In this document: positions 1 through 59,822 of the stretch, one piece after another
Numbering within the stretch: position 1 is the first letter of the stretch
Layout of the letters: each line of letters starts with the position of its first letter
Notes under the pieces: model-generated
Told to the model about the DNA's origin: nothing
The model's input: the letters and a program-made list of their open reading frames with translations, nothing else
Database searches by the model: none
Made by a program: the position numbers and the translations under genes
Assembly (NCBI GenBank): GCA_001643675.2
Contig: LSRY02000036.1
Location: forward strand, 868,001-932,000
DNA length: 64,000 nucleotides
Direction: 5' to 3'
Origin: Monocercomonoides exilis PA203
Lineage: Eukaryota; Protista; Preaxostyla

Positions 1-2
1 GT

Positions 3-6000: not shown

Positions 6001-7848
6001 GAGAATTTTTGAACAATAATCCATTCATTGAAAATTATCCATCATTGAGAAGAAATATCATCTGCTCAGATTCTGCTTCGCTGACCATTTCGAGCTTGAA
6101 GGGAGGAGATGGGGTGATGCCCAATTCTTCGCTGTGGATTCTGGATGATGGATGCAGCCTGGAAGGGATGGCAGGAGAAAGAGCATCTTCATTCTTCATT
6201 CCGGTGTTGGAAGGGGCTTCGACCAGCGAAAATGGAGGTGGAACAGAAATTCAATTCAAGGGGGTGCTTCTTCTGCCATGTGATTTGTCATTCCGACTGA
6301 TTTTGTCAGCTGGAGATACAGACCTGATTGAGACATATCCATTTGAAGAAGATGGGTTTGTGAGTGAAGCGGAAGCAGTTGGGATGGTGCCTTCGAGAAA
6401 TCTTTCGTCGATCCCAGATGAGACGGAGGTGTCTGTGATGATTGTGTATGGAAAGCGGTTGTCTGCAACTGATGCATTTGTTCTGAAGAACAGAAGCGAA
6501 CCCAAGGCAAATGGGGATGAAAGGGTTGCTGAAGGAGGAAAAGAAGGGAAATCTTATTGGTTGTTAATTGTGATTGTCATGAGTATCATATTACTAATTG
6601 TCCTTATTGGATTTATTTTATTCATTGTTCGATGGAAGAAGGTTAAGAATGAAGCAGAAGATCTGAGAGAGATTGTGAACGATAACATCAGAAAGGATCC
6701 GAAGGCGTTTGAGATGGTGACGATGGAGATGTTGCCTGAGGAGCAGTGGAGGAGAGCAGAGAGGGAGGCAGAGAAGAAGAGCGATGAGAGAATCAAGAAG
6801 AGGGTGTATGTGAAAAGTTTGGGACATTCGGAGTCATCGGAGCATCTTCTGTCTGAGAGTGGATCGACTGAATACATTTTGGGCAGAGACTCAGACAAGA
6901 TTCCTCAATGGATGCTTGAGAAAGAAGAAGAAGAAGAGATTCGAAAGAGAACTCCATCACCATCCATTTCATCCACTTCAACCACTTCAACAACTGATTC
7001 AGATTCAACTTTTGTTCGTGGGGAGGATCTGTGTCCAACCACTTCATCAATGTCGAATCTGGTGGATGCAATGGCATGCTCATCACCACACGAGAAATTG
7101 ATTGTGGATCTGAGGGATTCGCTGTTCATGCTGCTTCATGGAAGGAATGAGAAGAAGGAGATGGCGATAGGCACTCTGAAGGAAAGAGAGCAGACAGCTG
7201 CCCAGGTCTTGTTCTGGGTGGCCAATCTTGCGCTTCACTCATTTTCCGAGATGGACAACCCTCTTCAGTCACTTGTCAATCTGAGCCCACACATTGTGCT
7301 ATTCTCTGAGCACATGGTCATCTGCATCGTGATGCACTCCGACTTCTCATCTGACGATGATTCGGATTCATCATCCATCTCCTCGTCAACTGTTGCGACA
7401 TCTGCCAGCAATGATGATGATGAGGAGGAGGAGGACTCTCTGCCCTCGTCTGCCTTTGAGGATGAGGATGACAACAAAAAGGAGTGTCTGAGGTGGAAGG
7501 CGCCAGAGCTGCAGATGAACAAGAAGATGGGGGCAACAGAGAAGTCGGTGGCATTCTCGATCGGGATGATGCTGTGGGAGTGCCTGACGCTCCAGATCCC
7601 GTTTGGGGAGTATGAGGCAGAGGCAGCTGGGCAGAAGATTGTGAATGGAGAAGTGCCGAATGTGGGGCTGGTGAAGGACACACCATATTTGGAGTTTTGG
7701 AGGCTGTGTGTCTCGTGGAATGAGGCAGACAGGCCTTCTCTGAGTGGGATGAAGCGAGAGCTGGTTGGGCACTTTCCAGCTGGGGCAGTGATGGTGACGC
7801 TGACAGATGCAATCTGCGATTCTTTGCGAGAAGACGAAGAGGAAGAAA

Positions 7849-7886
<38 letters not shown>

Positions 7887-7940
7887 ATGAGCGAATCGAT
7901 AAGCAAAGAAGAAGGGAGGAAAAGCCGAAAATACTTGTGA
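3..7940 (+). CDS. Giant modular surface receptor with Cys-rich beta-helix-like ectodomain, single TM and C-terminal pseudokinase (paralog A; 5' end outside window)
   Basis: 2645-aa open frame running from the window edge. Repeated GGG/GGA[I/L] and FxxN-like motifs, and five CGxxxxPC-type modules (CGLNESYAC, CGYAEFPC, CGFEEFPC, CGLLEYPC, CGEMKGAC). TM YWLLIVIVMSIILLIVLIGFILFIV at ~6555-6630. Kinase C-lobe motifs WKAPE, FSIGMMLWECLTLQIPF and RPS. The first 1285 nt align with 52940-54224 of paralog C. Confidence 0.9.
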
Positions 7941-8304
7941 TGATGGTCGTATTGGTTGGCATTCTTTTGAGAAGGGCTTTCTTTGCTTTATTTTTTGACT
8001 GTTATTCGTTGAATGAGAAGTGGAGAGCAGAATGTGAATTTTCCCAGTGAGTTCAGTCTGCTTTCCATTTTTCGACTTTCTTCGAATCAGAATCAAAATG
8101 TTTCAAAAACAATTTTTTATTTTTCTCATTTTGACTTTTGTTTTCAATTTTTGTGAAAGTGAGTGTGTGTTTTATGGTGCTTTTAGCATCACCATTTTTT
8201 CGGTTAATAACAACGCTAAGCAAATTCAAATCAAGTTAAATTGCAATGAGACAGTTTTTTCATGTTGATTGCGAACATCACACAAAAAATCAAACAATTT
8301 GTTT

Positions 8305-8308
<4 letters not shown>

Positions 8309-14452: not shown

Positions 14453-14486
<34 letters not shown>

Positions 14487-37097: not shown

Positions 37098-40000
37098 GAA
37101 AAAATGGTGATGCTAAAAGCACCATAAAACATACATTCGCTTCCACAAAAAGTTGAAAACAAAAACCAAAATGAAAAAAGAAAATAACACATTTTTGAAA
37201 CATTTTGATTCTGATTTGAAGAAAGTCGAAAAATGGAAAGCAGTCTGAACTCACTGGGAAAATTCACATTCTGCTCTCCACTTCCCATTCAACGAATAAT
37301 AGTCAAAGAAGAAAGCAAAGAAAGCCCTTCTCAAAAGAATGCCAACCAATACGACCATCATCACAAGTATTTTCGACTTTTCCTCCCCTCTTCTTTGCTT
37401 ATCGCTTCGCTCATCCCATCTTCTTCCTCTTCCATCCCCTCTTCTTCCTCTTCCTCTTCGTCTTCGTCTCGCAAAGAATCGCAGATTGCATCTGTCAGCG
37501 TCACCATCACTGCCCCAGCTGGAAAGTGCCCAATCAGCTCTCGCTTCATCCCGCTCAGAGAAGGCCTGTCTGCCTCATTCCACGAGACACACAACCTCCA
37601 AAACTCCAAATATGGTGTGTCCTTCACCAGCCCCACATTCGGCACTTCTCCATTCACAATCTTCTGCCCAGCTGCCTCTGCCCCATACTCCCCGAACGGG
37701 ATCTGGAGTGTCAGGCACTCCCACAGCATCATCCCGATCGAGAATGCCACCGACTTCTCTGTTGCCCCCATCTTCTTGTTCATTTGCAGCTCAGGCGCCT
37801 TCCACCTCAGGCACTCCTTCTTGAAATTGTCATCCTCATCCTCAAAGGCAGACGAGGGCAGAGAGTCCTCCTCCTCCTCATCATCATCATTGCTGGCAGA
37901 TGTCGCAACAGTTGACGAGGAGATGGATGATGAATCCGAATCATCGTCAGATGAGAAGTCGGAGTGCATCACAATGCAGATGACCATGTGCTCAGAGAAT
38001 AGTACAATGTGTGGGCTCAGATTGACAAGTGACTGAAGAGGGTTGTCCATCTCGGAAAATGAGTGGAGGGCGAGATTGGCCACCCAGAACAAGACCTGGG
38101 CAGCTGTCTGCTCTCTTTCCTTCAGAGTGCCTATCGCCATCTCCTTCTTCTCATTCCTTCCATGAAGCAGCATGAACAGCGAATCCCTCAGATCCACAAT
38201 CAGCTTCTCATGTGGTGATGAACACGCCATTGCATCCACCAGATTCGACATCGATGAAGTGGTTGGGCACAGGTCCTCCCCTCGAACAAATGTGGATTCT
38301 GTATCTGAAGTGTCTGTGGTTGAAGTGGATGAAGTGGATGGAGATGGAGTTCTTTTTCTTGTTTCCTCATCTTCTTTTTCATCAACCTTCTCAAGCATCC
38401 ATTGAGGGATCTTGTCTGAGTCTCTGCCCAAAATGTATTCAGTCGATCCACTCTCTGACAGAAGATGCTCCGATGACTCCGAATGTCCCAAGCTTTTCGC
38501 ATACACCCTCTTCTTGATTCTCTCATCGCTCTTCTTCTCTGCCTCCCTCTCAGCTCTCCTCCACTGCTCCTCTGGCGACATCTCCATCGTCACCATCTCA
38601 AACGCCTTCGGATCCTTTCTGATGTTATCATTCACAATCTCTCTCAGATCTTCTGCTTCATTCTTAACCTTCTTCCATCGAATTACAAACAAAATAAAAC
38701 CGATGAGAACAATCAATAATATCACAACAAGCACAACAACAATCAACAACCAATACGATTTCCCTTCTTTTCCTCCTTCAGCAATCCTTTCATCCCCATT
38801 TGCCTTGGGTTCGCTTCTGTTCTTCAGAACAAATGCATCAGTTGCAGACAACCGCTTTCCATACACAATCATCACAGACACCTCCGTATCGTCTGGGATC
38901 GACGAAAGATTTCTCGAAGGCACCATCCCAACTGCTTCCGCTTCACTCACAAACCCATCTTCTGCAAAATGATATGTCTCAATCAGGTCTGTATCTCCAG
39001 CTGATAAAATCAGTCGGAATGACAAATCACATGGCAGAAGAAGCGCTCCCTTGAATTGAATTTCTGTTCCACCTCCATTTTCGCTGGCCGAAGCCCCTTC
39101 CAACACCGGAATGAAGAATGAAGATGCTCTTTCAGAAACAATCCCTTCAAAACTGCATCCATCATTCAAAATCCACATCGATATGTCTGGGAAAACTCCA
39201 TCTCCCCCTTTCAAGCTGGAAATTGACAGTGATCCTGAATCAGAGCAGATGATATTTCTTCTCAATGATGGATAATTTTCAATGAATGGATTATTGTTCA
39301 AAAACTCTCCTTTCTCAATTGCCACATTCCCGCTCGATATAGATAATCCACCTGAAGAAGCATTCAATATTGTCACATCCTTCATCATCAATGTTGTATT
39401 AGTTGAATGAACAAGTGATCCACTCCATTCACATATTTCTTCAAATGCATCATTTCTCTTCCTCTCGCTTTCACTTTCTTTTGAAAGAATTCCTTCAAAC
39501 CCACAAATGTGCATGGAAACATTCTTCGCATTGTTCATCTCCATCATGCTTCCTTTGTTTGACAGAGAATTACAGTCTGAACAAGAACAATTTGAAAGAA
39601 CAATTTGAGCAGATGACAAGGATGCAGAAAGAACAGAAGCTCCTTCTGAATTCCTAGAGCAGTTCTTGAATAAGGAGCTTCCAACAGAAATTGCCCCTGA
39701 AGTTGAACTGTCAATCGAAATGATGCAACCCTCAGACAATTTCACTCCATTCACAACTATTCCATTGAGTGCAACGCTTCCACAGTTGCCAATCTCAAAA
39801 ACATTTCTTGTTGATTCAATCTGTTCCAGCTTCATGTTTGTCAACGATATCTCTTCCCCACAAAACTGAAAGAATGGCTTCTTGAATGAAAGGAGCAATA
39901 TTAAGCAGTTGTCAACATGCAGAATCCCTTTTGCAATGCTCAGCAAGGTTGAATTGAGAACAACAGAAGGTTGATTGATATTTGACCCTCCAACAGAAGA

Positions 40001-42609
40001 GAAGTCAACAAATGAAAGAGAAAGCTGACCACTTGATTCATGAATGATTGAACTCCCCGAATATGAAAATAACTGACCAAAATTGAATTTCAATCTCTCA
40101 ATTCTAACATTCTCTGAGGTTGTGATAAGACTTTCCTCTTTGGTTATTGTTGAGTTCAGATACGCAAAAGCCGATGAAGGAGATTGCAGTGAGCGGATGC
40201 TCATATCTTGAACACTGCATTCCCCAACAACAACTGTTTCCTTTGAGATAAGCAGTTGAGAATATGATGAAGGAATGATGTGTTGAACTCCCACATTCAG
40301 CGACTCGCAAGGTGCATTGACCTCTCCACATTGTTTGCTATCTGCGTGATTGTCTGCAGTTATAGACACAAATATAGTCTCGCTCTGATATTTCACAACC
40401 CTCAGCAGAAGATCCTCTTCACCCACAAAAGAGTCTGTTGTGCAGCCCCACATTGCCAGCTCCTTCACAAATGGCAATCTGAAATCCAACAAGAATTGCT
40501 CATCAACAATTTGTGTTTCAATCGAATGGCATCTCACATACACATCTCTCCCTCTGAATGCAGAGTTGTCTCTGAATGTGATGTTCGACAGAACAAAATT
40601 CAGAGGCTGCTCAGCTGTCGAGGTGCATTCCAGAAACAGCCACCCGCCTCTTCCTGTGCTCGAGCAGAAGCACTCAGAAATCGTGCAAAATGAGCAGTCA
40701 AAGTTTCCTCCCTCATTCAACACAGAAAACATTCCTCCTCCCTTTTCACATTTCGATCCGCCGCATCTCTTCATTGTTGTGTTTCTAACAACCATTTTCA
40801 ATGGCTCTTCATCATTTTTGTTCCGAATGATGGGAATATCATCAGTTGTATTCTGAGTGACTTCTTCGAATGAACTCCATTCAATAACAACATCTTGCTC
40901 CACTTCATTTTTCTCTCTTCTTGAACTCTTTGAAATGCTCAATCCGCTTGCACCATCAAGCTCAACATTCTTCATCGTAAGATTTTTCATATTCAAAATT
41001 GTTGTTGGATGAACGGAAATAATATCTTGTGAAAAGCAAAGTGATTGAATTGCCACAATTTCCAACACAACTGTGCCTTCATCTGCCTCGATCAACCCAA
41101 AGTTAATCATTTCTTCTTCTTCTTCATTTTCTTCCTTTTTGCTGAATGAACAATCTTTCAGAGTCAATAGTCCTTCACTTGATCCAATATGCAACAAAAC
41201 ATTGACTCCACTTGCGAATGAAGGTGGAACAACAAAGCTTATCAGTTCGAAATTGGTAATACTTTGAATCTTCATTGCCGTTCCTTCTGTTCCTTCAAGC
41301 GAAGAGAGACATTCCAAAGAGCACATGACTGTATTATTTGATCTTGTTGAAAGCCCACTGACATCAACACTCTTCTGAAGAATCGCCTTTCCTATGACAC
41401 TGATAATCCTTTCATTTCCTTCAACCATTCGCTCCAAAGAATAATCGATTGACAGGCAAGGATAATCTGAGAATCCACACGCACCCATGTCTCTTCCTTC
41501 GCTCCCAACAAATAACTCTGAGCCAATTGCTCTCCAGAAATAGATCAGTGGAACAGCATTCTCTGTATCATTCCCATCAAAGCCGCTCATGGAATCCAAG
41601 GAAATATCATTCAGATTCTCAGATACAAACGGAAGGGATGCGTTTGTGATGCTCTTTGTCAAGTTTGGCGATTCAACAAAAGATCATTTCCATATTTGGC
41701 AGTGTTTGGATTATCATCATCAAAAGCAGGGGATGATATCACAAATGAAGAATCACCATCCACCAACTTCAATGCCATCCCTCCTCCAAACCCAGTCTTC
41801 GCTTCTCCAGCTGGTGCTGCACATCCCGTAAATGTGCTTGAAATAATATTCAATTGCGTGTTCCCTTTCATCTGTGCGAAAATAGCTCCTCCTTTGCCTC
41901 CATCAGACAGCACGCAACATCCATCAAAGCCACACTCTTCGATATTGATTTCTCCATTTGAATTTTCATTTTCATCATTGCTGTTATTGATGTTCACACA
42001 GCCTCCACATCCTGCTGTTCTTTCAATTTTTGTGAAATTGCTTTTCGTCATGTTCAGCCATTTGGTGTTCATTAACTCGGCATTTGTTCCGGTTCCAGAC
42101 AAAGAGATCAATGGATTTCCACTCAAAGTGATTGAAGAAGCAGAGAAGTTGTCGATCGTCAGGATTCCAGATTCAACAGATAAGAATAGCAATACCAATT
42201 CTGATGAAGGTGCTTGAAGAATCAAAGAACAATGAGACAAAGTCAGTTGTGAAGAAGACGAAATGAAAGTGGAATGTGATGAAAAAGAAGGAGGAAGAGA
42301 GAAGATAAGTGTTGATAATTCTGTTTCAATACTTGCTGTTATCATCGCTGAGTTTGATGTCGAACTTGCATCAGAGACTGTCCAGCCACTTTGATCATCA
42401 TTTCCTCTGATTTCATGCTTCTGTTCACCAAATGCCAATTCATCACCCATCATAATCATTCCATTCACAACAACTTTCTTTTCTCCTGTTAGCCGTGTGA
42501 GTGAATGTTTCATTGTCAAACAAGGGAATTTGACTATTCCACAGTGTGAATGATCACATGCCTCAGAATTGCTCACATATATTTCTGCTGGAATGGGAAG
42601 GAGATAAAT
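37098..42609 (-). repeat. Left arm of ~5.5-kb near-identical inverted repeat (partner 54310-59822)
   Basis: Reverse complement matches 54310-59822 nearly base for base. The antisense ORFs in the track are mirrored, with coordinates summing to ~96920. Confidence 0.95.
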
Positions 42610-45206
42610 ACACAAAGGAATGGCTGCACTTGTATTTCCATTGTCATATCCTTGCACTTTGTCAACAGAATCCAAAGAGGCAGTGACGCATGTGATTTTT
42701 TGTGACTTCGCGGTCACTTCCAGATTTGGGGAAATAACAAAGATATCACTTCCACATTTGGCCGTGTTCGTTACAAAGGAAGAAGAAATCAGGAATTCTG
42801 GATTTTCATTCAATAATCGAAGAAGAATTCCTCCCCCCAGTCCGTTGGATGAAGAACAAAAGCACTCATCAAAATTACCACCTTTCACTTTCACATCATT
42901 TCCATTTCCAACACACAACATCATCGATCCCCCATCAGCAGATGTTCTGCTTCCGCATCCTTCAAAAGTGCTCGAATTCAGATCAATAATTATATTATCC
43001 CTGGAAAACGATATTACAGATGCTCCGCTTGTAGTTTTTTCTATTCCACTGAAGGAACACACTGAGAGAGTCAATGAAATTTCATTTGTTGAAGAAAGCG
43101 AAAACAACGAAACAGCGGAGATAGTCTTTTCCCAGTTCACATTTTCCATCTGAAACATGCCATTCTGAATGTTTATCAGCTCTGCAGCAAATGCTGTATT
43201 TTCACTTTGTTCGCTTCCAGCAAATATGTTCAGATTGCTTATATGCATCTCTCCAGCTCCAGTGATCTCAAATAGCCTTGAGGCTCGATTATTTGCAAAT
43301 GCCGAGTCATGCACAAGTTCAAGGTCACTGATGGACAATTCACCTGTTGAGACTGAGAAAAGAGATAATCCAGTTGCCTCTAATTCTGTCTGCACTATCG
43401 TGCTCAAATCACTTTGACCATAAATCGTGATGGCAATGGAGCCACAATCCACACCTTTGGTTTCTGTGATCGTTCCTGCGAGAATCTCAACATCTTTCAC
43501 AAATTCAGGAATAAGTTGAGTGAGGCAATGGCTGACAGTGTTGCATGGATAGCTTTCGTTGATTCCACATGCATATGCATCTTTGGCATTTTGTTGTGCT
43601 TGCACTGAGGAGACAAATCTAACTCTTCCACCATCATTCCGAAGCCATTCACTTTTATCTCCATTTTCAGATACAGTTGTGCTAACTCTATTTATTGTAT
43701 TCCGAGTTGAATAACAACTCGAATCAATATTATTTTCTGAAGATCCCGAAAGATAAATATCATGGCCACTTCTTCTACATGTATTATTGTGGAAAAAACA
43801 ATAAAAAAATAATGTTCCTTTATTAATTGAATTTATTTGTTGACAAGCAGCACCTCCATCATTCTCCGAAGAACAGTTGCAGAAAAGACAACTGGAAATG
43901 ACAACTTTGTCTGTGCAATCCCAATGTTCTATTGCCCCTCCTCCAGAACTTCCCGAGTTAAGAGCACTGCAATTTAAAAATACACAATTTGAAATGCAGT
44001 GCTTTTGCACCTGAGTTTTTGTTGGACGGAGATCAATTGCGCCCCCATCGTTTCCAGATGAGCAATTCTCAAATGAGCAGCAATCAGCAAGAGATTGAGT
44101 TAACGCATTCTCAACCATTATTCCTCCACCGCCACAGTCCGTATTAATCGAAGCGCAAGAGCATTGAACAAATGATGTGAATTTCACAATGCATTCTGCT
44201 ATTTTCAATGCATATATTCCTCCGCCTCTTGTTGAAGAAGCATTGCAATTTGTAAAGGTTGAATTTTCCACCTTCAAAATTGCATTTTCGTTGTCATGCA
44301 CAAAAAGAGCACCTCCTTGTGGGGCTGTGCAGTCAGTCCATTCACACAATGAAAAGGATTGGCTATCAGTAAAATTCATCTGTCCTTTTTTTTCTAGATC
44401 ATTCATTTCTCTTTTCCCGATGTGTGTAGTTGTGTTTCTGCAGACAAATGAATTTGAAGAATAGGATCCGCTCGAGGCCCTTCCTTCAAAGGCATTCGCA
44501 CATGAATAAATGAGGCAATTCTCCATAGAACTCAGAAAACATGAATGTTCCACAAAATGATCGCTATTCGCATCATATTTCACAGACATGTTCCTGAAGG
44601 CACAATCATTGATCTGTTCACTTTTGCTCTTTCCTGATAACAGGAAATAGTCTGAGGATGATATAGTCAGATCCATCATGATCGAATTGCTCAAAATAGC
44701 AATATTTGAATCATCAGAAGAAAATACGAGACTGGAAGGGTTCAAATTCTTTTGAGGGATCAAAGTCAAATTCACAACATTGATTGACCCACTTTGTAAA
44801 TGAAAAGGAGATTCCGATTTTTGTTGGGAAATGCAGGAATCAATTGTGATAATTGATTTATCTGTAATAAACATGAAAGGTGAAGAAAAATGTTCAATTG
44901 CCAAATTTTTCAGTCCATTTGTGGAATTGGAAAATACAAAAAATAAATTAACAACTGTTGATATTCCTGACTGCAATCTTTTCACTTCTGAGACTGTATT
45001 CTGATCAAAAAAGAAATTGTTATCACCCTTGGATAGAAAATGTGAATCATTTGAATTGCCTTGATATTTATAAATACAGATAATGCAAATTTTTAATTAT
45101 TCAAAAAAATTCCTATATTTTTCAATGGGGAAATACCTGAGGTATTTTGTGCTGCAAATGCCTTCCCAAGAATCAAATATGCCAAAACGCACAAATGCAT
45201 TCTCAT
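37361..45206 (-). pseudogene. Giant modular receptor-pseudokinase paralog B, interrupted by a 1-bp frameshift at ~41680 (real lesion or sequencing error)
   Basis: Signal-peptide exon 45206-45137 (MRMHLCVLAYLILGKAFAAQNTS), then phase-1 intron 45060-45136, then ORFs 41659-44985 and 37361-41662. Coding strand reads GATCTTTTGTTG where C reads GATCTTTTTGTTG. Confidence 0.85.
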
Positions 45207-49866: not shown

Positions 49867-49888
49867 AATTTTTGTTAAGCAATATATG

Positions 49889-51813: not shown

Positions 51814-54800
51814 ATGATGGTATTTCTATTTGTTTTGGCTGAGTGTTTGTATTTGATATTTTGTGGCACAGATAGAAATGATGCCCAAAGGAATGGACAT
51901 CTCATTTATCACATTCATGCTCAGTCTGAAAGTCATGTTTTGGAGCAGGGAAGTGTTATTCGACTGTTCTGCGAAATGCATAACTCATCAGTCAAATTGA
52001 AGGAAATGACGTTGGAAAAGGCAGATGATGACGTGGTATTTGATACAAGAGCAAAATCATTCCTGCGCATTGATGACTGCTTGTTGATTAGAAAAAGAGG
52101 TTTCAATGGGTATTTTGTATTCAATGAAGGAACATGCGAAATGACAAACACCACTTTGAACATCGAAAAAAGAAATAACAATTGTGATATGATGATGAAG
52201 AGTCTTGTGAAGATGGAAGAAGAAGATTCATCGTTGCTTGTGAGAAACAGTGAGTGGAAGAACATTGTGTTTTGTGGGAACGGAAGCATTTTGAGAAATG
52301 GAGAAGGGTCATTTGAAGGAATCAAAAACTGTGCTTTTTCAAACATCACAATGAAATTCATGGAAACAGATGAAATGTCAATTGAGAAAGGGTCAATGAT
52401 GAAAATGAGCATTATGGAAGATTGCCGAGTTGAAAGATCGATGAATGTGCTGGAGGAAGGGATTGTGAGTGGAACAGAAGGATCCGTTGCATTTTCTTGC
52501 AACAACTGCACATTCGTTCACAACAAAAGGATCGATCAGAAAAAAAGAAATAATGAGCATCTGGATACAACCCAATCTCAGCATTTCACGAATGCTAAAT
52601 GGAATGAATGCTCAGCTCCATGTGGTGGAGCATTGTATGTGCATGAAAATTCGAGTGCAACGCTCACTGTGGAGAATTCGTCATTTGTGAAATGCAATGC
52701 AACTTCAACACAAGGCGGAGGAATTTATGCTTTAAACATAGCTGAATGTACTGTGAAGCATTCCGTGTTTGAAGAGTGTTATTGTGCTTCATCAACAGAC
52801 TACGGAGGGGCTGGTGCGGAGGTTGAAGAGTTGAATGTTCAAGTTCTTTTCGAAAATTGCATGTTTAGAAACTGTTTGTCGCAAAATGATGCAGGAGGCT
52901 TATTTATCGGAACATCAAAAGCATCAAAAACAAACGATTGTGTGCTGGATTGTTTGTTTATCAATTGCAGTGGCAATAATGCTAGCAATGGTGATGGCGG
53001 AGGACTGATGAATTGGAACCAAATTGATAAGATTGTGACAAAAAACTGTTTGTTTAACGGGTGTCATTCAGATAAGGAAGGCGGAGGAATTTCTTTAATG
53101 GTTAGAAGCTTTTCAGGAAGTTTGATTTGTTTTTGCTTTTTCCACAATAACAGTGCTCCGTTCGGGAGTGATGTACTTGTCAGCCAAAAAATAGATTATT
53201 CCCAACTGATTTGGTGTTTTTCAACAAAAACAGATGGGCTGAGATATTATGATGGGGAAGATAAAAGTGATTGGTTGCCAAACAATGGGGGGAAATGCAG
53301 ATTCGTCTCCTCCAAATTGACTCAATCCAAAGCGAAAGATACATATAGCTGCGGGTTGAATGAGAGTTATGCCTGTCTAACAATCAGCCATTGTCTTTCC
53401 CAATTGATCGTGGGGTTTGTGGAGGAAATGAAGGTGTTGAGTGGAACAGTTGTGGAAGGCAAAGGAGTTGACATTGGTGATAAAACGATCTCTTTGAGTG
53501 GAGTTTCTCCCTCTGGCTCTTCTGTTGAAACAAAGTTTGAGGGAAGTGGATTGAGCCTATTTTGTGTTGGAGCAGGGGAGTTGGCTGTGAATGATCTGTC
53601 AGTTGTTCACAACACCTCATTTGAAAACAACAGACAATGCAGATTATTTGAGATTCAAGGGGTTGGAGGGATCAATTTGGAGAGAATGGACATTTCGATG
53701 GATGCACATCATTCAGAAGAGAGGAGCATTCAAAACTCACTTGTGAAAGTTGATGGTGGAGAGTTGAAAATGAAAGATGTGAAATGGTCGCAAACGTACA
53801 GCACCGCAAGTGCGATATCTCTTTCTCAAGGATCGTCTGTTTCATTGTCTCTGGATAACTGCACATTTAGCAACATTGTGAGGACAACAGCCGGATCATC
53901 GTTGATAAGTTCAGGTGAAGGGTCGTTTTCGATTACTCTTGAAGGATGCATGATTGATGGCTGTGGAAGTGAAGCCTCTGATTTTGGAGGAGGGATGATG
54001 ATTGAAGTGGGGAATATTGGTTCATTGAGGATGAATGGAGGGTTTGTGAAGAACTGTTATGCCTCGACCACTCAAGGGAGAGGAGGAGGGATTGGGCTGA
54101 AAGTGAAAGATACAAATGCAGATTTTTTAATATCATCAACATTTGAAGGAAACAGGGCGAAATGGGGAAGTGATATTTTCGTTGACTCGATCGATCTGGG
54201 AACGACTGCAACAAGTGGGAAGATAGCGTGTATTACAGGTTCATTGGATTCTTTTGATAAGGTGAGAGGATACGACAAGATAAACACGAGTTTGGCCATC
54301 CCTTTATGCATTTATCTCCTTCCCATTCCAGCAGAAATATATGTGAGCAATTCTGAGGCATGTGATCATTCACACTGTGGAATAGTCAAATTCCCTTGTT
54401 TGACAATGAAACATTCACTCACACGGCTAACAGGAGAAAAGAAAGTTGTTGTGAATGGAATGATTATGATGGGTGATGAATTGGCATTTGGTGAACAGAA
54501 GCATGAAATCAGAGGAAATGATGATCAAAGTGGCTGGACAGTCTCTGATGCAAGTTCGACATCAAACTCAGCGATGATAACAACAAGTTTTGAAACAGAA
54601 TTATCAAAAATTATCTTCTCTCTTCCTCATTCTTTTTCATCACATTCCACTTTCATTTCGTCTTCTTCACAACTGACTTTGTCTCATTGTTCTTTGATTC
54701 TTCAAGCACCTTCATCAGAATTGGTATTGCTATTCTTATCTGTTGAATCTGGAATCCTGACGATCGACAACTTCTCTGCTTCTTCAATCACTTTGAGTGG

Positions 54801-57800
54801 AAATCCATTGATCTCTTTGTCTGGAACCGGAACAAATGCCGAGTTAATGAACACCAAATGGCTGAACATGACGAAAAGCAATTTCACAAAAATTGAAAGA
54901 ACAGCAGGATGTGGAGGCTGTGTGAACATCAATAACAGCAATGATGAAAATGAAAATTCAAATGGAGAAATCAATATCGAAGAGTGTGGCTTTGATGGAT
55001 GTTGCGTGCTGTCTGATGGAGGCAAAGGAGGAGCTATTTTCGCACAGATGAAAGGGAACACGCAATTGAATATTATTTCAAGCACATTTACGGGATGTGC
55101 AGCACCAGCTGGAGAAGCGAAGACTGGGTTTGGAGGAGGGATGGCATTGAAGTTGGTGGATGGTGATTCTTCATTTGTGATATCATCCCCTGCTTTTGAT
55201 GATGATAATCCAAACACTGCCAAATATGGAAATGATCTTTTTGTTGAATCGCCAAACTTGACAAAGAGCATCACAAACGCATCCCTTCCGTTTGTATCTG
55301 AGAATCTGAATGATATTTCCTTGGATTCCATGAGCGGCTTTGATGGGAATGATACAGAGAATGCTGTTCCACTGATCTATTTCTGGAGAGCAATTGGCTC
55401 AGAGTTATTTGTTGGGAGCGAAGGAAGAGACATGGGTGCGTGTGGATTCTCAGATTATCCTTGCCTGTCAATCGATTATTCTTTGGAGCGAATGGTTGAA
55501 GGAAATGAAAGGATTATCAGTGTCATAGGAAAGGCGATTCTTCAGAAGAGTGTTGATGTCAGTGGGCTTTCAACAAGATCAAATAATACAGTCATGTGCT
55601 CTTTGGAATGTCTCTCTTCGCTTGAAGGAACAGAAGGAACGGCAATGAAGATTCAAAGTATTACCAATTTCGAACTGATAAGCTTTGTTGTTCCACCTTC
55701 ATTCGCAAGTGGAGTCAATGTTTTGTTGCATATTGGATCAAGTGAAGGACTATTGACTCTGAAAGATTGTTCATTCAGCAAAAAGGAAGAAAATGAAGAA
55801 GAAGAAGAAATGATTAACTTTGGGTTGATCGAGGCAGATGAAGGCACAGTTGTGTTGGAAATTGTGGCAATTCAATCACTTTGCTTTTCACAAGATATTA
55901 TTTCCGTTCATCCAACAACAATTTTGAATATGAAAAATCTTACGATGAAGAATGTTGAGCTTGATGGTGCAAGCGGATTGAGCATTTCAAAGAGTTCAAG
56001 AAGAGAGAAAAATGAAGTGGAGCAAGATGTTGTTATTGAATGGAGTTCATTCGAAGAAGTCACTCAGAATACAACTGATGATATTCCCATCATTCGGAAC
56101 AAAAATGATGAAGAGCCATTGAAAATGGTTGTTAGAAACACAACAATGAAGAGATGCGGCGGATCGAAATGTGAAAAGGGAGGAGGAATGTTTTCTGTGT
56201 TGAATGAGGGAGGAAACTTTGACTGCTCATTTTGCACGATTTCTGAGTGCTTCTGCTCGAGCACAGGAAGAGGCGGGTGGCTGTTTCTGGAATGCACCTC
56301 GACAGCTGAGCAGCCTCTGAATTTTGTTCTGTCGAACATCACATTCAGAGACAACTCTGCATTCAGAGGGAGAGATGTGTATGTGAGATGCCATTCGATT
56401 GAAACACAAATTGTTGATGAGCAATTCTTGTTGGATTTCAGATTGCCATTTGTGAAGGAGCTGGCAATGTGGGGCTGCACAACAGACTCTTTTGTGGGTG
56501 AAGAGGATCTTCTGCTGAGGGTTGTGAAATATCAGAGCGAGACTATATTTGTGTCTATAACTGCAGACAATCACGCAGATAGCAAACAATGTGGAGAGGT
56601 CAATGCACCTTGCGAGTCGCTGAATGTGGGAGTTCAACACATCATTCCTTCATCATATTCTCAACTGCTTATCTCAAAGGAAACAGTTGTTGTTGGGGAA
56701 TGCAGTGTTCAAGATATGAGCATCCGCTCACTGCAATCTCCTTCATCGGCTTTTGCGTATCTGAACTCAACAATAACCAAAGAGGAAAGTCTTATCACAA
56801 CCTCAGAGAATGTTAGAATTGAGAGATTGAAATTCAATTTTGGTCAGTTATTTTCATATTCGGGGAGTTCAATCATTCATGAATCAAGTGGTCAGCTTTC
56901 TCTTTCATTTGTTGACTTCTCTTCTGTTGGAGGGTCAAATATCAATCAACCTTCTGTTGTTCTCAATTCAACCTTGCTGAGCATTGCAAAAGGGATTCTG
57001 CATGTTGACAACTGCTTAATATTGCTCCTTTCATTCAAGAAGCCATTCTTTCAGTTTTGTGGGGAAGAGATATCGTTGACAAACATGAAGCTGGAACAGA
57101 TTGAATCAACAAGAAATGTTTTTGAGATTGGCAACTGTGGAAGCGTTGCACTCAATGGAATAGTTGTGAATGGAGTGAAATTGTCTGAGGGTTGCATCAT
57201 TTCGATTGACAGTTCAACTTCAGGGGCAATTTCTGTTGGAAGCTCCTTATTCAAGAACTGCTCTAGGAATTCAGAAGGAGCTTCTGTTCTTTCTGCATCC
57301 TTGTCATCTGCTCAAATTGTTCTTTCAAATTGTTCTTGTTCAGACTGTAATTCTCTGTCAAACAAAGGAAGCATGATGGAGATGAACAATGCGAAGAATG
57401 TTTCCATGCACATTTGTGGGTTTGAAGGAATTCTTTCAAAAGAAAGTGAAAGCGAGAGGAAGAGAAATGATGCATTTGAAGAAATATGTGAATGGAGTGG
57501 ATCACTTGTTCATTCAACTAATACAACATTGATGATGAAGGATGTGACAATATTGAATGCTTCTTCAGGTGGATTATCTATATCGAGCGGGAATGTGGCA
57601 ATTGAGAAAGGAGAGTTTTTGAACAATAATCCATTCATTGAAAATTATCCATCATTGAGAAGAAATATCATCTGCTCTGATTCAGGATCACTGTCAATTT
57701 CCAGCTTGAAAGGGGGAGATGGAGTTTTCCCAGACATATCGATGTGGATTTTGAATGATGGATGCAGTTTTGAAGGGATTGTTTCTGAAAGAGCATCTTC

Positions 57801-59559
57801 ATTCTTCATTCCGGTGTTGGAAGGGGCTTCGGCCAGCGAAAATGGAGGTGGAACAGAAATTCAATTCAAGGGAGCGCTTCTTCTGCCATGTGATTTGTCA
57901 TTCCGACTGATTTTATCAGCTGGAGATACAGACCTGATTGAGACATATCATTTTGCAGAAGATGGGTTTGTGAGTGAAGCGGAAGCAGTTGGGATGGTGC
58001 CTTCGAGAAATCTTTCGTCGATCCCAGACGATACGGAGGTGTCTGTGATGATTGTGTATGGAAAGCGGTTGTCTGCAACTGATGCATTTGTTCTGAAGAA
58101 CAGAAGCGAACCCAAGGCAAATGGGGATGAAAGGATTGCTGAAGGAGGAAAAGAAGGGAAATCGTATTGGTTGTTGATTGTTGTTGTGCTTGTTGTGATA
58201 TTATTGATTGTTCTCATCGGTTTTATTTTGTTTGTAATTCGATGGAAGAAGGTTAAGAATGAAGCAGAAGATCTGAGAGAGATTGTGAATGATAACATCA
58301 GAAAGGATCCGAAGGCGTTTGAGATGGTGACGATGGAGATGTCGCCAGAGGAGCAGTGGAGGAGAGCTGAGAGGGAGGCAGAGAAGAAGAACGATGAGAG
58401 AATCAAGAAGAGGGTGTATGCGAAAAGCTTGGGACATTCGGAGTCATCGGAGCATCTTCTGTCAGAGAGTGGATCGACTGAATACATTTTGGGCAGAGAC
58501 TCAGACAAGATCCCTCAATGGATGCTTGAGAAGGTTGATGAAAAAGAAGATGAGGAAACAAGAAAAAGAACTCCATCTCCATCCACTTCATCCACTTCAA
58601 CCACAGACACTTCAGATACAGAATCCACATTTGTTCGAGGGGAGGACCTGTGCCCAACCACTTCATCGATGTCGAATCTGGTGGATGCAATGGCGTGTTC
58701 ATCTCCTCATGAGAAATTGATTGTGGATCTGAGGGATTCGCTGTTCATGCTGCTTCATGGAAGGAATGAGAAGAAGGAGATGGCGATAGGCACTCTGAAG
58801 GAAAGAGAGCAGACAGCTGCCCAGGTCTTGTTCTGGGTGGCCAATCTCGCCCTCCACTCATTTTCCGAGATGGACAACCCTCTTCAGTCACTTGTCAATC
58901 TGAGCCCACACATTGTACTATTCTCTGAGCACATGGTCATCTGCATTGTGATGCACTCCGACTTCTCATCTGACGATGATTCGGATTCATCATCCATCTC
59001 CTCGTCAACTGTTGCGACATCTGCCAGCAATGATGATGATGAGGAGGAGGAGGACTCTCTGCCCTCGTCTGCCTTTGAGGATGAGGATGACAATTTCAAG
59101 AAGGAGTGCCTGAGGTGGAAGGCGCCTGAGCTGCAAATGAACAAGAAGATGGGGGCAACAGAGAAGTCGGTGGCATTCTCGATCGGGATGATGCTGTGGG
59201 AGTGCCTGACACTCCAGATCCCGTTCGGGGAGTATGGGGCAGAGGCAGCTGGGCAGAAGATTGTGAATGGAGAAGTGCCGAATGTGGGGCTGGTGAAGGA
59301 CACACCATATTTGGAGTTTTGGAGGTTGTGTGTCTCGTGGAATGAGGCAGACAGGCCTTCTCTGAGCGGGATGAAGCGAGAGCTGATTGGGCACTTTCCA
59401 GCTGGGGCAGTGATGGTGACGCTGACAGATGCAATCTGCGATTCTTTGCGAGACGAAGACGAAGAGGAAGAGGAAGAAGAGGGGATGGAAGAGGAAGAAG
59501 ATGGGATGAGCGAAGCGATAAGCAAAGAAGAGGGGAGGAAAAGTCGAAAATACTTGTGA
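51814..59559 (+). CDS. Giant modular receptor-pseudokinase paralog C (complete, 2581 aa)
   Basis: Signal peptide MMVFLFVLAECLYLIFCG. GGALYV/GGGIYA/FxxN motifs and four CGxxxxPC modules. TM at ~58165-58240. WKAPE/FSIGMMLWE kinase remnant. Confidence 0.92.
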   Translation: MMVFLFVLAECLYLIFCGTDRNDAQRNGHLIYHIHAQSESHVLEQGSVIRLFCEMHNSSVKLKEMTLEKADDDVVFDTRAKSFLRIDDCLLIRKRGFNGYFVFNEGTCEMTNTTLNIEKRNNNCDMMMKSLVKMEEEDSSLLVRNSEWKNIVFCGNGSILRNGEGSFEGIKNCAFSNITMKFMETDEMSIEKGSMMKMSIMEDCRVERSMNVLEEGIVSGTEGSVAFSCNNCTFVHNKRIDQKKRNNEHLDTTQSQHFTNAKWNECSAPCGGALYVHENSSATLTVENSSFVKCNATSTQGGGIYALNIAECTVKHSVFEECYCASSTDYGGAGAEVEELNVQVLFENCMFRNCLSQNDAGGLFIGTSKASKTNDCVLDCLFINCSGNNASNGDGGGLMNWNQIDKIVTKNCLFNGCHSDKEGGGISLMVRSFSGSLICFCFFHNNSAPFGSDVLVSQKIDYSQLIWCFSTKTDGLRYYDGEDKSDWLPNNGGKCRFVSSKLTQSKAKDTYSCGLNESYACLTISHCLSQLIVGFVEEMKVLSGTVVEGKGVDIGDKTISLSGVSPSGSSVETKFEGSGLSLFCVGAGELAVNDLSVVHNTSFENNRQCRLFEIQGVGGINLERMDISMDAHHSEERSIQNSLVKVDGGELKMKDVKWSQTYSTASAISLSQGSSVSLSLDNCTFSNIVRTTAGSSLISSGEGSFSITLEGCMIDGCGSEASDFGGGMMIEVGNIGSLRMNGGFVKNCYASTTQGRGGGIGLKVKDTNADFLISSTFEGNRAKWGSDIFVDSIDLGTTATSGKIACITGSLDSFDKVRGYDKINTSLAIPLCIYLLPIPAEIYVSNSEACDHSHCGIVKFPCLTMKHSLTRLTGEKKVVVNGMIMMGDELAFGEQKHEIRGNDDQSGWTVSDASSTSNSAMITTSFETELSKIIFSLPHSFSSHSTFISSSSQLTLSHCSLILQAPSSELVLLFLSVESGILTIDNFSASSITLSGNPLISLSGTGTNAELMNTKWLNMTKSNFTKIERTAGCGGCVNINNSNDENENSNGEINIEECGFDGCCVLSDGGKGGAIFAQMKGNTQLNIISSTFTGCAAPAGEAKTGFGGGMALKLVDGDSSFVISSPAFDDDNPNTAKYGNDLFVESPNLTKSITNASLPFVSENLNDISLDSMSGFDGNDTENAVPLIYFWRAIGSELFVGSEGRDMGACGFSDYPCLSIDYSLERMVEGNERIISVIGKAILQKSVDVSGLSTRSNNTVMCSLECLSSLEGTEGTAMKIQSITNFELISFVVPPSFASGVNVLLHIGSSEGLLTLKDCSFSKKEENEEEEEMINFGLIEADEGTVVLEIVAIQSLCFSQDIISVHPTTILNMKNLTMKNVELDGASGLSISKSSRREKNEVEQDVVIEWSSFEEVTQNTTDDIPIIRNKNDEEPLKMVVRNTTMKRCGGSKCEKGGGMFSVLNEGGNFDCSFCTISECFCSSTGRGGWLFLECTSTAEQPLNFVLSNITFRDNSAFRGRDVYVRCHSIETQIVDEQFLLDFRLPFVKELAMWGCTTDSFVGEEDLLLRVVKYQSETIFVSITADNHADSKQCGEVNAPCESLNVGVQHIIPSSYSQLLISKETVVVGECSVQDMSIRSLQSPSSAFAYLNSTITKEESLITTSENVRIERLKFNFGQLFSYSGSSIIHESSGQLSLSFVDFSSVGGSNINQPSVVLNSTLLSIAKGILHVDNCLILLLSFKKPFFQFCGEEISLTNMKLEQIESTRNVFEIGNCGSVALNGIVVNGVKLSEGCIISIDSSTSGAISVGSSLFKNCSRNSEGASVLSASLSSAQIVLSNCSCSDCNSLSNKGSMMEMNNAKNVSMHICGFEGILSKESESERKRNDAFEEICEWSGSLVHSTNTTLMMKDVTILNASSGGLSISSGNVAIEKGEFLNNNPFIENYPSLRRNIICSDSGSLSISSLKGGDGVFPDISMWILNDGCSFEGIVSERASSFFIPVLEGASASENGGGTEIQFKGALLLPCDLSFRLILSAGDTDLIETYHFAEDGFVSEAEAVGMVPSRNLSSIPDDTEVSVMIVYGKRLSATDAFVLKNRSEPKANGDERIAEGGKEGKSYWLLIVVVLVVILLIVLIGFILFVIRWKKVKNEAEDLREIVNDNIRKDPKAFEMVTMEMSPEEQWRRAEREAEKKNDERIKKRVYAKSLGHSESSEHLLSESGSTEYILGRDSDKIPQWMLEKVDEKEDEETRKRTPSPSTSSTSTTDTSDTESTFVRGEDLCPTTSSMSNLVDAMACSSPHEKLIVDLRDSLFMLLHGRNEKKEMAIGTLKEREQTAAQVLFWVANLALHSFSEMDNPLQSLVNLSPHIVLFSEHMVICIVMHSDFSSDDDSDSSSISSSTVATSASNDDDEEEEDSLPSSAFEDEDDNFKKECLRWKAPELQMNKKMGATEKSVAFSIGMMLWECLTLQIPFGEYGAEAAGQKIVNGEVPNVGLVKDTPYLEFWRLCVSWNEADRPSLSGMKRELIGHFPAGAVMVTLTDAICDSLRDEDEEEEEEEGMEEEEDGMSEAISKEEGRKSRKYL

Positions 59560-59822
59560 TGATGGTCGTATTGGTTGGCATTCTTTTGAGAAGGGCTTTC
59601 TTTGCTTTCTTCTTTGACTATTATTCGTTGAATGGGAAGTGGAGAGCAGAATGTGAATTTTCCCAGTGAGTTCAGACTGCTTTCCATTTTTCGACTTTCT
59701 TCAAATCAGAATCAAAATGTTTCAAAAATGTGTTATTTTCTTTTTTCATTTTGGTTTTTGTTTTCAACTTTTTGTGGAAGCGAATGTATGTTTTATGGTG
59801 CTTTTAGCATCACCATTTTTTC
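54310..59822 (+). repeat. Right arm of ~5.5-kb near-identical inverted repeat (partner 37098-42609)
   Basis: Matches the left arm; includes ~260 bp of 3' non-coding sequence. Confidence 0.95.

What the first reader, a model, noticed from the sequence alone, without database searches (positions are those of the whole stretch)
51814..59559. Paralog C is a chimera of A-type and B-type ectodomain modules, joined at a module boundary: a module-shuffling receptor diversification system
Seen: C 52940-54224 aligns colinearly at high identity with A 1-1285. From 54310 to 59822 C is instead nearly identical to B, while A's next modules are only distantly related. B's N-terminal part is only distantly related to C's. 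The switch lies at the conserved 'GxD...IPLCxYL' motif that ends each module. All three genes converge again on a shared membrane-proximal/TM/cytoplasmic block (A from ~5990, IEKGEFLNNNPF). Inference: ectodomain modules are swapped between paralogs by recombination or gene conversion at conserved junctions onto a homogenised signalling tail. This is a variable-ectodomain/constant-tail repertoire, analogous to antigenic-variation or immune-like receptor families, in a protist.
Basis: partly seen in the sequence, partly recalled or inferred. Interest (0 to 1): 0.82.

Follow-up and report, generated by a model that had tools for sequence, protein, structure and literature searches.

The report
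Mosaic giant receptor gene, gene conversion
Gene C of the gut protist Monocercomonoides exilis really is a patchwork of its neighbours A and B, but so are many other copies sampled from this roughly 1000-copy surface-receptor family. The pattern fits ordinary copying of DNA between nearby paralogs rather than a dedicated shuffling machine.

Summary
Gene C (51814-59559) is 97-100% identical to A over about 52790-53450 and 86-98% up to 54224. From 54310 to 59822 it differs from its inverted neighbour B by only 10 substitutions and one 1-bp indel (99.8%). An 85-bp transition zone lies just before the IPLCIYL motif that closes a beta-helix domain. Trees left and right of the junction are strongly incongruent (AU p about 2e-70 and 1e-89).

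C is not special, though. It belongs to a family of about 1000 giant receptor-like genes in Monocercomonoides exilis. Each has tandem beta-helix modules outside, one membrane span, and a conserved tail holding only half a kinase.
- Three neighbouring pairs, B/C included, show "different head, near-identical body".
- A itself carries a 480-bp C-type cassette.
- Junctions sit where alignable homology between divergent heads begins.
- Motif codons vary synonymously, dN/dS is below 1, and a shared premature stop is present in both arms of one pair.

The best reading is homology-limited gene conversion between nearby, mostly inverted, paralogs, not a dedicated system. The scan has already described this family and process on other pieces of this genome.

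The parts
51814..59559 (+). Gene C. It is an intact 2581-aa ORF with a signal-peptide-like N-terminus, an N-terminal domain, tandem beta-helix modules, one TM segment and a cytoplasmic tail.
   Evidence: ORF list; motifs and hydrophobic run; AF2 and Foldseek.
51814..52600 (+). C head segment that is closest to five contig-C9 paralogs (78-94%), while A is only 65-72%.
   Evidence: Whole-gene identity profile.
52790..53268 (+). Hypervariable N-domain cassette. C equals A at 97-100%, whereas A's own siblings L044 and L045 are only 50-80% here. The only other holder is a contig-C9 gene (92%).
   Evidence: dS is 0.9-2.2 in this block for every pair compared.
53260..53277 (+). DKSDWL motif at the boundary between the N-domain and module 1. 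It marks the right edge of the A/C cassette and is homologous to the outer end of the L038/L039 arms.
53269..54224 (+). Module 1 of C, of the A type. It is 86-100% identical to A, L044 and L045, against 70-93% to C9 copies.
   Evidence: left-hand tree.
54225..54309 (+). Transition zone that is neither A-like nor B-identical. It is closest to C9 copies (82-85%). Two alternative haplotypes switch at different points in different paralogs.
54298..54318 (+). IPLCIYL motif, the C-terminal cap of beta-helix module 1.
   Evidence: AF2 secondary structure at model residues 345-356; codon variants.
54310..59822 (+). Arm of the inverted repeat shared with B. It spans 5513 bp at 99.8% identity and includes 263 bp of 3' flank.
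37098..42610 (-). The matching arm, in gene B.
37361..44985 (-). Gene B, read as two ORFs (1108 + 1433 aa) split by a 1-bp deletion relative to C. Its head belongs to the other deep clade and is closest to C32:519-529k (83%).
41677..41681 (-). B frameshift: a T4 run where C has T5 (C 55238). This may be a real lesion or a nanopore homopolymer error.
1..7940 (+). Gene A. It starts 1101 bp left of the window and encodes 3014 aa of the three-module type. Its siblings are L044 (22 kb upstream) and L045.
5984..8306 (+). A's membrane-proximal, TM and tail block plus 3' flank. It is 91-92% identical to B and C.
58162..58242 (+). Predicted transmembrane segment of C, followed by RWKKVK (positive-inside).
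   Evidence: Hydrophobic run at aa 2119; read from the sequence.
59092..59385 (+). Kinase C-lobe remnant, the only Pfam match in C: PF07714 profile positions 162-258 of 258.
   Evidence: PDB phmmer to TAK1, TNNI3K and ILK from the APE motif onward.

Best explanation
C is a genuine mosaic member of the largest gene family of Monocercomonoides exilis. The family encodes type-I membrane proteins with an N-terminal head domain, two or three (or more) tandem right-handed parallel beta-helix modules, one TM segment, and a highly conserved cytoplasmic tail in which only the C-terminal half of a TKL-type kinase is recognisable.

The mosaic arose by homology-dependent ectopic gene conversion or recombination between nearby paralogs. 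Three layers can be seen:
1. A contig-C9-like backbone, visible in the 5' 800 bp and in the 85-bp zone 54225-54309.
2. An older exchange with the A lineage. A-type sequence lies in C over 53269-54224, and a C-type 480-bp cassette was copied into A.
3. A very recent intrachromosomal conversion between the inverted neighbours B and C. It made 5.5 kb identical apart from 0.2% differences, and probably ran from B into C.

The tract stops at the module boundary because upstream of about 54114 the two genes carry heads of two deep clades (about 50% identity). Heteroduplex cannot extend there, so the conserved module cap is the first or last stretch of usable homology.

What is shown: the mosaic structure, the incongruent trees, repetition of the pattern at other loci, the fold of the modules, and the degenerate tail. 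What is inferred: the conversion mechanism, its direction, and receptor function.
For: Identity structure and breakpoints:
- Sliding identity and base-by-base differences.
- Triplet test: 603/53 A-type versus B-type informative sites left of 54240-54244 and 3/776 right of it.

Phylogeny:
- The left segment (53300-54200) has two deep clades, with C beside A, L044, L045 and the C9 copies, and B in the other clade.
- The right segment (54320-55400) mixes these clades and pairs B with C.
- AU tests reject a (B,C) clade on the left (p = 2e-70) and reject the left-hand clade I on the right (p = 1e-89).

The same pattern elsewhere:
- L038/L039 on C32 form a convergent inverted pair: 8006 bp at 99.96% in the strict match, with arms running on to 697511 and 698165, a 653-bp unique spacer, and the outer end exactly at DKSEWL.
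- L009/L010 on C9 share 3250 bp at 99.5% and 1890 bp at 99.8%, with a diverged 0.76-kb patch between them and the same in-frame stop in both.
- L034 and L045 share a 1589-bp tail tract at 99.7%.

Homology and signals:
- Most paralogs genome-wide become alignable to C only from 54114-54150 onward.
- There is no DNA-level signal: the motif codons vary synonymously.
- dS for a single gene pair ranges from 0.03 to 2.2 along the gene, which indicates segments of different age.

Family and fold:
- The organism and family were identified from a protein search in which all listed hits (the best 120 of 173) are MONOS_ proteins.
- The genome papers report 101 contigs and 82.3 Mb, and name 'tyrosine kinases' as the largest family (PMC8767320, PMC6759080).
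- AF2 gives pLDDT 86.8, and the top Foldseek matches are PL6 alginate lyases, pectin methylesterases and tailspikes.
- The 39-aa tail motif gave 997 first-look candidates, and all 150 scored were 100% identical.
Against:
- The assembly is nanopore-based and was polished with short reads ten times. In 99%-identical repeats this could inflate identity, and it could leave the B frameshift uncorrected.
- The direction of the B/C event is only weakly indicated. B+C sit beside clade-II-head genes in the right-hand tree with SH-aLRT 94 on a short branch, and the tail is regionally homogenised anyway.
- Conversion cannot be strictly distinguished from a recent inverted duplication of the body followed by replacement.
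- The clustering of block boundaries counts non-independent pairs, and part of it reflects the edges of conservation islands.
Confidence: 0.8

Rival explanations
1. This is a dedicated diversification system. Variable head or module cassettes would be deliberately swapped at conserved junction motifs onto a constant signalling tail, in the manner of antigenic variation or an immune-like receptor repertoire.
For: - Block boundaries are discrete and recur: both edges of the hypervariable cassette, the IPLCIYL junction, and the start of the constant block at 57594.
- All head-by-body combinations exist.
- A length-conserved hypervariable cassette with very deep divergence can move as a unit, as in the A/C patch.
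- The copy number is very large, about 1000.
- Earlier scan notes report arrays of head-only fragments elsewhere in the genome. I did not test this.
Against: - The motifs are conserved as protein, not as DNA.
- Junction positions differ between events: 54253-54310, 54445-54495, and DKSEWL. In each case the junction follows the edge of homology for that particular pair.
- dN/dS is 0.2-0.5 in the ectodomain, with no window above 1.
- The L009/L010 arms share the same in-frame stop, and about a quarter of scored copies lie in short open frames.
- There is no evidence of an expression site, of exclusive expression, or of a specialised recombinase.
Confidence: 0.1
2. This is an assembly or polishing artefact. 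The C head would have been wrongly joined to a copy of B's body, or two arms that really differ by a few percent were homogenised by repeated short-read polishing.
For: - The assembly comes from Canu on nanopore reads (read N50 8.9 kb), followed by Nanopolish and ten rounds of Pilon.
- The B frameshift lies in a T4/T5 homopolymer.
- The exact C protein is not in the protein collection.
- No reads could be examined.
Against: - Both arms lie hundreds of kb inside a 1.07-Mb contig, and both have unique flanks on each side.
- The arms still differ at 10 substitutions, in two clusters.
- C's left part is unique in the genome, being only 86-98% identical to A, and it is joined through an 85-bp zone that matches neither A nor B.
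- The reading frame and domain architecture are intact and match five C9 genes.
- The same head-differs, body-identical pattern recurs at two other loci. One has a 653-bp non-palindromic spacer, and another has an internal diverged patch.
- The 5.5-kb repeat is shorter than the read N50.
Confidence: 0.07
3. This is a recent inverted segmental duplication rather than conversion. The 3' 5.5 kb of B would have been duplicated and inserted in frame behind a pre-existing C head, replacing or creating the body of C.
For: Near-identity extends into the 3' flank and ends sharply at both ends. Convergent or divergent inverted pairs are very common in the family: 12 of 12 pairs lying closer than 12 kb are (+,-).
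Against: - C's 5' part and the 85-bp zone belong to a lineage (the C9 type) whose members all already have a colinear body. A body was therefore present to be overwritten.
- An exact in-frame insertion at a homologous position is itself a homologous event.
- Patchy tracts in L009/L010 and short shared-polymorphism patches in the tail fit repeated conversion.
Confidence: 0.1

Closest known systems
Plasmodium falciparum var (PfEMP1) genes: mitotic ectopic recombination producing chimeric genes (Claessens et al. 2014, PMC4270465)
   Same: Both are large families of modular surface proteins. In both, recombination between paralogs of low overall identity gives in-frame chimeras that keep the domain architecture.
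   Different: For var genes, events were observed directly in clone trees, and the genes have a known role in immune evasion with exclusive expression. Here only the historical footprints are seen. The host relationship is commensal, the ectodomain is made of beta-helix modules, the family is about 15 times larger, and many exchanges are between inverted neighbours in cis.
Arm-to-arm gene conversion in large palindromes of mammalian sex chromosomes (e.g. human Y palindrome P6, PMC3723533)
   Same: Both have inverted repeats of several kb with a unique spacer, kept above 99.8% identical. Both show multi-kb tracts and occasional short patches.
   Different: Here the arms are the bodies of two protein-coding paralogs, and their outer ends lie inside the genes. 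Each arm therefore keeps a different N-terminal head. The process has not been demonstrated experimentally in this organism.
Published 'protein tyrosine kinase / TKL' expansion of M. exilis (332 genes; PMC6759080, PMC8767320)
   Same: This is the same gene family. Hits are MONOS_ proteins carrying PF07714, and the papers note that the family overlaps with 'unclassified repeats'.
   Different: In the passages I searched, the papers count the genes as kinases and do not describe the beta-helix ectodomain, the half-kinase tail, the roughly 1000 genomic copies, or the mosaic and palindromic organisation.
Right-handed parallel beta-helix proteins (PL6 alginate lyases, pectin methylesterase, phage tailspikes, autotransporter adhesins such as Ag43)
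   Same: The predicted fold of the ectodomain modules matches. PL6 lyases also have two tandem beta-helix domains.
   Different: There is no sequence-family membership: no Pfam hit even at E up to 1. Sequence identity to the matched PDB chains is only 7-12%, so nothing points to a shared catalytic site. The context is a eukaryotic type-I membrane protein.
Receptor pseudokinases and transmembrane-kinase expansions of other protists (e.g. Entamoeba TMKs; recalled from my own knowledge, not tested here)
   Same: Both are large families pairing a variable extracellular domain with a single TM segment and a kinase-like tail. Some members lack catalytic residues.
   Different: The ectodomain fold differs. 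Here every sampled member lacks a recognisable N-lobe.

Membership tests
M. exilis giant beta-helix receptor / half-kinase family (annotated as TKL kinases) | Conserved cytoplasmic tail, including the 39-aa DLCPTTSSMSNLVDAM... block | tested here: met
   C's block is 100% identical to all 150 scored loci out of 997 candidates. Tails are 65-95% identical to 46 family members.
M. exilis giant beta-helix receptor / half-kinase family (annotated as TKL kinases) | Ectodomain of tandem modules, each closing with an IPLxxY[LFW]-type motif | tested here: met
   Motifs lie at aa 829 and 1185 in C, and at equivalent places in 15 paralogs. All listed hits (the best 120 of 173) to aa 430-1200 are MONOS_ proteins.
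Right-handed parallel beta-helix fold | Stacked three-stranded coils, with structural similarity to solved beta-helix proteins | tested here: met
   The AF2 model of aa 480-1200 has pLDDT 86.8 and is all-beta in short regular strands. Foldseek against PDB gives PL6 alginate lyases at E 1e-5 with probability 1.0, and pectin methylesterase at TM 0.44-0.48 by target.
Catalytically active protein kinase (TKL group) | Complete kinase domain with an N-lobe (Gly-rich loop, VAIK lysine) | tested here: not met
   Pfam matches only profile positions about 157-258 of 258, in C and in 6 of 6 other members. PDB matches begin at the APE motif.
Catalytically active protein kinase (TKL group) | HRD catalytic aspartate and a DFG motif | tested here: inconclusive
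   By eye, the 47-tail alignment shows a conserved NLSPH where HRDLKxxN would be and HSD where DFG would be. This register is my own reading. The AF2 model of the tail was too poor to check it (pLDDT 41.7).
Programmed antigenic-variation system (VSG / var type) | Large repertoire of variants with mosaic formation by segmental conversion | tested here: met
   About 1000 copies, with pervasive mosaicism.
Programmed antigenic-variation system (VSG / var type) | Diversifying selection on the exposed part | tested here: not met
   Windowed dN/dS is 0.17-0.76 in the ectodomain, with no window above 1. The windows are coarse (150 codons) and the sequences are mosaic.
Programmed antigenic-variation system (VSG / var type) | Exclusive expression, an expression site, or a dedicated recombination signal | not testable with these tools
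   No reads or transcripts were available. No DNA-level conservation was found at the junction motifs.
Palindrome with arm-to-arm gene conversion | Inverted arms above 99% identical around a unique spacer | tested here: met
   B/C are 99.8% identical over 5513 bp, with 11.7 kb between the arms. L038/L039 are 99.96% identical over 8 kb, with a 653-bp spacer.
Palindrome with arm-to-arm gene conversion | Identity maintained by ongoing conversion rather than by one recent duplication | tested here: inconclusive
   Three observations suggest repeated events: patchy tracts and a shared stop in L009/L010, four-gamete patterns within 14 bp of the tail, and heads of different deep clades on the two arms. 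No population or time-series data are available.

The most novel reading that the evidence does not exclude
The roughly 1000-copy family, perhaps a tenth of the genome, is a combinatorial receptor-diversification apparatus of a commensal protist. In this reading, hypervariable head cassettes and whole beta-helix modules are exchanged preferentially at structurally neutral inter-module caps, and the inverted-pair organisation has been selected because it promotes such exchange while a constant pseudokinase tail is preserved.
Probability: 0.1. Interest if true: 0.85.

Novelty: new member of a known kind. Interest (0 to 1): 0.5.

Why it matters
M. exilis is the model eukaryote without mitochondria. 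Its largest gene family has been reported only as 'tyrosine kinases' and as a source of 'unclassified repeats'.

These genes turn out to be giant beta-helix surface proteins with a half-kinase tail. They may number about 1000, and they evolve by intense local gene conversion, often between inverted neighbours. That changes how the genome's repeat content, its kinome count and its surface biology should be read. It also warns that gene models and assemblies in these regions need long-read validation.

The mechanism itself, homology-limited ectopic conversion, is well known from other surface-protein families and from sex-chromosome palindromes. The value lies in a clean, large natural example rather than in a new principle.

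Tried and rejected
- Independent records of C: the exact-sequence look-ups were blank. This may only mean that the public gene model differs or that own-genome records are withheld.
- Pfam on the ectodomain: four pieces gave no family even at E up to 1, and the whole protein gave none at E up to 0.01.
- AF2 of the cytoplasmic tail: pLDDT 41.7, so it was not used for fold search.
- AU test of (C + A-type genes) on the right-hand segment: uninformative (p = 0.49), because the very long A-type branch can attach almost anywhere. I discarded it.
- Histogram of identity change-points: kept only as a description. Pairs are not independent, and the 55500 peak is the edge of a conservation island rather than an exchange.
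- The conservation profile of the junction loci is biased, because those loci were selected by similarity to 54000-54600.
- Donor search for the C-specific 5-substitution cluster at 54583-54629: no match better than B itself.
- I rejected the idea of a fold-back artefact for L038/L039 after finding a 653-bp non-palindromic spacer.
Full report
WHAT THE WINDOW IS. The window is G000:C32:868001-932000 of an 82.3-Mb, 101-contig genome. Size and contig number match the nanopore assembly of Monocercomonoides exilis PA203 (PMC8767320). A protein search with the ectodomain of gene C returned 173 hits, and all 120 listed are M. exilis MONOS_ proteins.

The window holds three giant paralogs among unrelated genes:
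- A, on the + strand. It starts 1101 bp left of the window and ends at 7940 (3014 aa).
- B, on the - strand, 37361-44985. It reads as two ORFs.
- C, on the + strand, 51814-59559 (2581 aa, intact).

CHECK OF THE OBSERVATION. A-C identity is 0.85-0.99 up to about 54200 and then collapses. B-C identity is about 0.5 before that point.

From 54310 to 59822 B and C differ by 10 substitutions and one 1-bp indel in 5513 bp. This stretch includes 263 bp past the stop codon. A joins both again at A 5984 = C 57594, at 91-92% identity.

A triplet test places the switch at 54240-54244. There are 603 A-type versus 53 B-type informative sites on the left, and 3 versus 776 on the right.

Four refinements apply:
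- The join passes through an 85-bp zone (54225-54309) that matches neither A nor B exactly. It is closest to contig-C9 copies.
- The A-like part has a 97-100% core (52790-53450) and an 86-98% remainder.
- C's first 800 bp resembles five contig-C9 genes rather than A.
- B's frameshift is a T4 run where C has T5. In a nanopore assembly this may be an error.

WHAT THE PROTEINS ARE. Pfam recognises nothing in the ectodomain. In the tail it recognises only positions 162-258 of the 258-position PF07714 kinase profile. Six other family members give the same half-match. PDB sequence matches (TAK1, TNNI3K, ILK) start at the APE motif.

An alignment of 47 tails is 65-95% identical to C. By my reading it shows a conserved NLSPH where the HRD catalytic loop would be, HSD where DFG would be, and no glycine loop. 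The structure model of the tail was too poor to confirm this.

An AF2 model of C aa 480-1200, built on 68 paralogs, has pLDDT 86.8 and shows two tandem all-beta solenoids. Foldseek matches PL6 alginate lyases (two beta-helix domains), pectin methylesterases and tailspikes.

The IPLCIYL motif lies in the C-terminal cap of the first solenoid, so the A/B switch in C falls between two folded domains. The hydrophobic run at aa 2119 followed by RWKKVK gives a type-I topology, which I read from the sequence.

Two architectures exist: two-module (about 2550 aa) and three-module (about 3010 aa). C lacks 1.3 kb relative to L040, between C 54840 and 54863.

SIZE OF THE FAMILY. A 39-aa tail block gave 997 first-look candidates. 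All 150 that were scored were 100% identical, mostly in open frames of 2500-4200 aa, and 37 lay in frames shorter than 2000 aa. The genome papers list 332 'tyrosine kinases' as the largest family and note its overlap with 'unclassified repeats'. In the passages my keyword look-ups returned from those papers, and in a separate library search, I found no description of the ectodomain, of mosaicism or of palindromes.

C IS ONE MOSAIC AMONG MANY. Five contig-C9 genes are colinear with C over its whole length at about 80%, so the 'A-type head on B-type body' layout is an established architecture. B's head is closest to a gene at C32:519-529k (83%), and that gene's body is also B/C-like.

Trees built on the 35 retained junction loci are incongruent (three of the 38 aligned rows were dropped as duplicates or misaligned). 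Left of the junction there are two deep clades: C with A, L044, L045 and ten C9 copies, and B with 20 others. Right of it all two-module genes form one shallow group in which the two head clades are interleaved, and B pairs with C. AU tests reject (B,C) on the left (p = 2e-70) and reject the left-hand clade on the right (p = 1e-89).

Other recent tracts:
- L038/L039, a convergent inverted pair on C32, share 8006 bp at 99.96% in the strict match. Their arms end at a 653-bp unique spacer on the inside and exactly at the DKSEWL motif (N-domain/module-1 boundary) on the outside.
- L009/L010 on C9, inverted and of different head clades, share 3250 bp at 99.5% and 1890 bp at 99.8% around a 0.76-kb patch of 89-94%. 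Both carry the same in-frame stop.
- L034 and L045 share 1589 bp of tail at 99.7%.
- A carries a 480-bp patch (C 52790-53268) that is 97-100% C-type. A's siblings L044 and L045 are only 50-80% identical there. The patch ends at DKSDWL.

In the tail, four variant sites within 14 bp occur in all combinations among paralogs. Among the 150 scored tail loci, all 12 pairs lying closer than 12 kb are (+,-), that is, convergent.

WHY THE JUNCTIONS SIT AT MODULE ENDS. Most paralogs genome-wide become alignable to C at the DNA level only from 54114-54150 onward. Upstream, the two head clades are about 50% identical.

In each near-identical pair the tract runs up to the point where that particular pair loses homology:
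- B/C: 54253-54310.
- L009/L010: 54445-54495.
- L038/L039: DKSEWL, because only the hypervariable block upstream of it differs.

The motifs are conserved as protein, not as DNA. For example, ATC/ATT occur 16/15 times and TGC/TGT 25/10 times. This fits homology-limited conversion and does not call for a recombination signal.

Identity change-points among 13 full-length genes cluster at both edges of the hypervariable cassette, at the IPLCIYL junction, at the start of the constant block and near the 3' end. None fall in long stretches between these points. This count is descriptive, and part of it reflects the edges of conservation islands.

SELECTION. Windowed dN/dS is 0.17-0.76 in the ectodomain and 0.04-0.15 in the tail. 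For a single gene pair, dS ranges from 0.03 to 2.2 along the gene, and the block at aa 300-450 is always the deepest.

The tail's family-wide conservation therefore comes from purifying selection, since dS is 0.6-0.7 between C and C9 copies. Within contig C32 the tails are additionally homogenised, at 85-99% nucleotide identity.

HISTORY OF C (inferred). C has a C9-like backbone, seen in the 5' 800 bp and in the 85-bp zone. It then exchanged sequence with the A lineage: A-type sequence lies over 53269-54224 in C, and a C-type cassette was copied into A. Finally, a very recent conversion with B occurred. The 0.18% divergence of the B/C tract compares with dS of 0.3-0.5 between typical paralogs. 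The direction B to C is suggested by the neighbours of B+C in the right-hand tree (SH-aLRT 94) and by C's native remnants, but it is not settled.

ARTEFACT? I could not examine reads. Several points argue against a chimera:
- Both arms have unique flanks deep inside a 1.07-Mb contig.
- Arm-specific variants persist.
- The C head is unique in the genome, and the transition zone matches no other copy.
- The frame and architecture are intact.
- The pattern recurs at two other loci that differ in detail.
- The repeat is shorter than the read N50 of 8.9 kb.
Repeated short-read polishing could still have trimmed a few real differences.

COMPARISON AND VERDICT. The pattern resembles two known cases. 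One is var-gene mitotic recombination, which gives in-frame chimeras that preserve architecture between paralogs about 63% identical (PMC4270465). The other is arm-to-arm conversion in sex-chromosome palindromes (PMC3723533). It is a new, large example in a family not described this way in the papers I searched, not a new kind of mechanism.

Earlier notes of this scan describe the same family and process on other pieces of this genome, including head-only fragment arrays that I did not test. They agree with what I found independently here.

Noticed in passing
window 54583-54629: Five substitutions cluster within 47 bp as the only differences between the B and C arms in this part of the tract. 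All five change the amino acid, and all are unique to C, since B carries the family-common bases. Four of the five are G/C to A/T changes. No donor copy was found in the genome (the best other match is 91-92%). This could be a mutation cluster, a patch from an unscored donor, or a polishing error.
   Followed up: partly
L047 2952-2954 and L048 (reverse strand) 2981-2983 (contig C9, about 305.0 kb and 317.0 kb): Both members of the near-identical inverted pair L010/L009 carry the same in-frame stop codon at the homologous position, and L009 has an extra frameshift. The arms therefore share a null mutation, through conversion or through duplication.
   Followed up: partly
genome-wide: The 39-aa tail block has 997 first-look candidates, and all 150 scored were 100% identical. 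That is roughly three times the 332 'tyrosine kinases' published. At about 8 kb per gene it could be near a tenth of the genome. About a quarter of scored copies lie in open frames under 2000 aa.
   Followed up: partly
genome-wide: All 12 pairs of scored tail loci that lie less than 12 kb apart are in (+,-) orientation, that is, convergent and tail-to-tail. No tandem pair was seen at that distance.
   Followed up: no
window 59092-59385 and family tails (A3): The published 'tyrosine kinase' label rests on the C-lobe only. No sampled member (7 of 7) matches the first 155 or so positions of the Pfam kinase profiles.
   Followed up: partly
window 49651-49869 versus 63242-63459 (+) and 63421-63214 (inverted): A short 210-220-bp repeat, 79-86% identical, occurs in AT-rich intergenic DNA. 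One copy lies between B and C and two overlapping copies in opposite orientations lie downstream of C. It may be a small mobile or palindromic element.
   Followed up: no
window 9232-16818 (-): A 2528-aa ORF has SNF2-type helicase motifs (DEMGLGKT and others, read by eye) and very long Ser-, Glu- and Lys-rich low-complexity inserts. It is an unrelated gene lying between A and B.
   Followed up: no
L044 (C32:835838-845837) versus A: A and its upstream neighbour L044, 22 kb away in the same orientation, are 95-100% identical over most of their length. The exceptions are the first 1 kb or so and the 480-bp C-type patch in A. This is another recent exchange between neighbours.
   Followed up: partly
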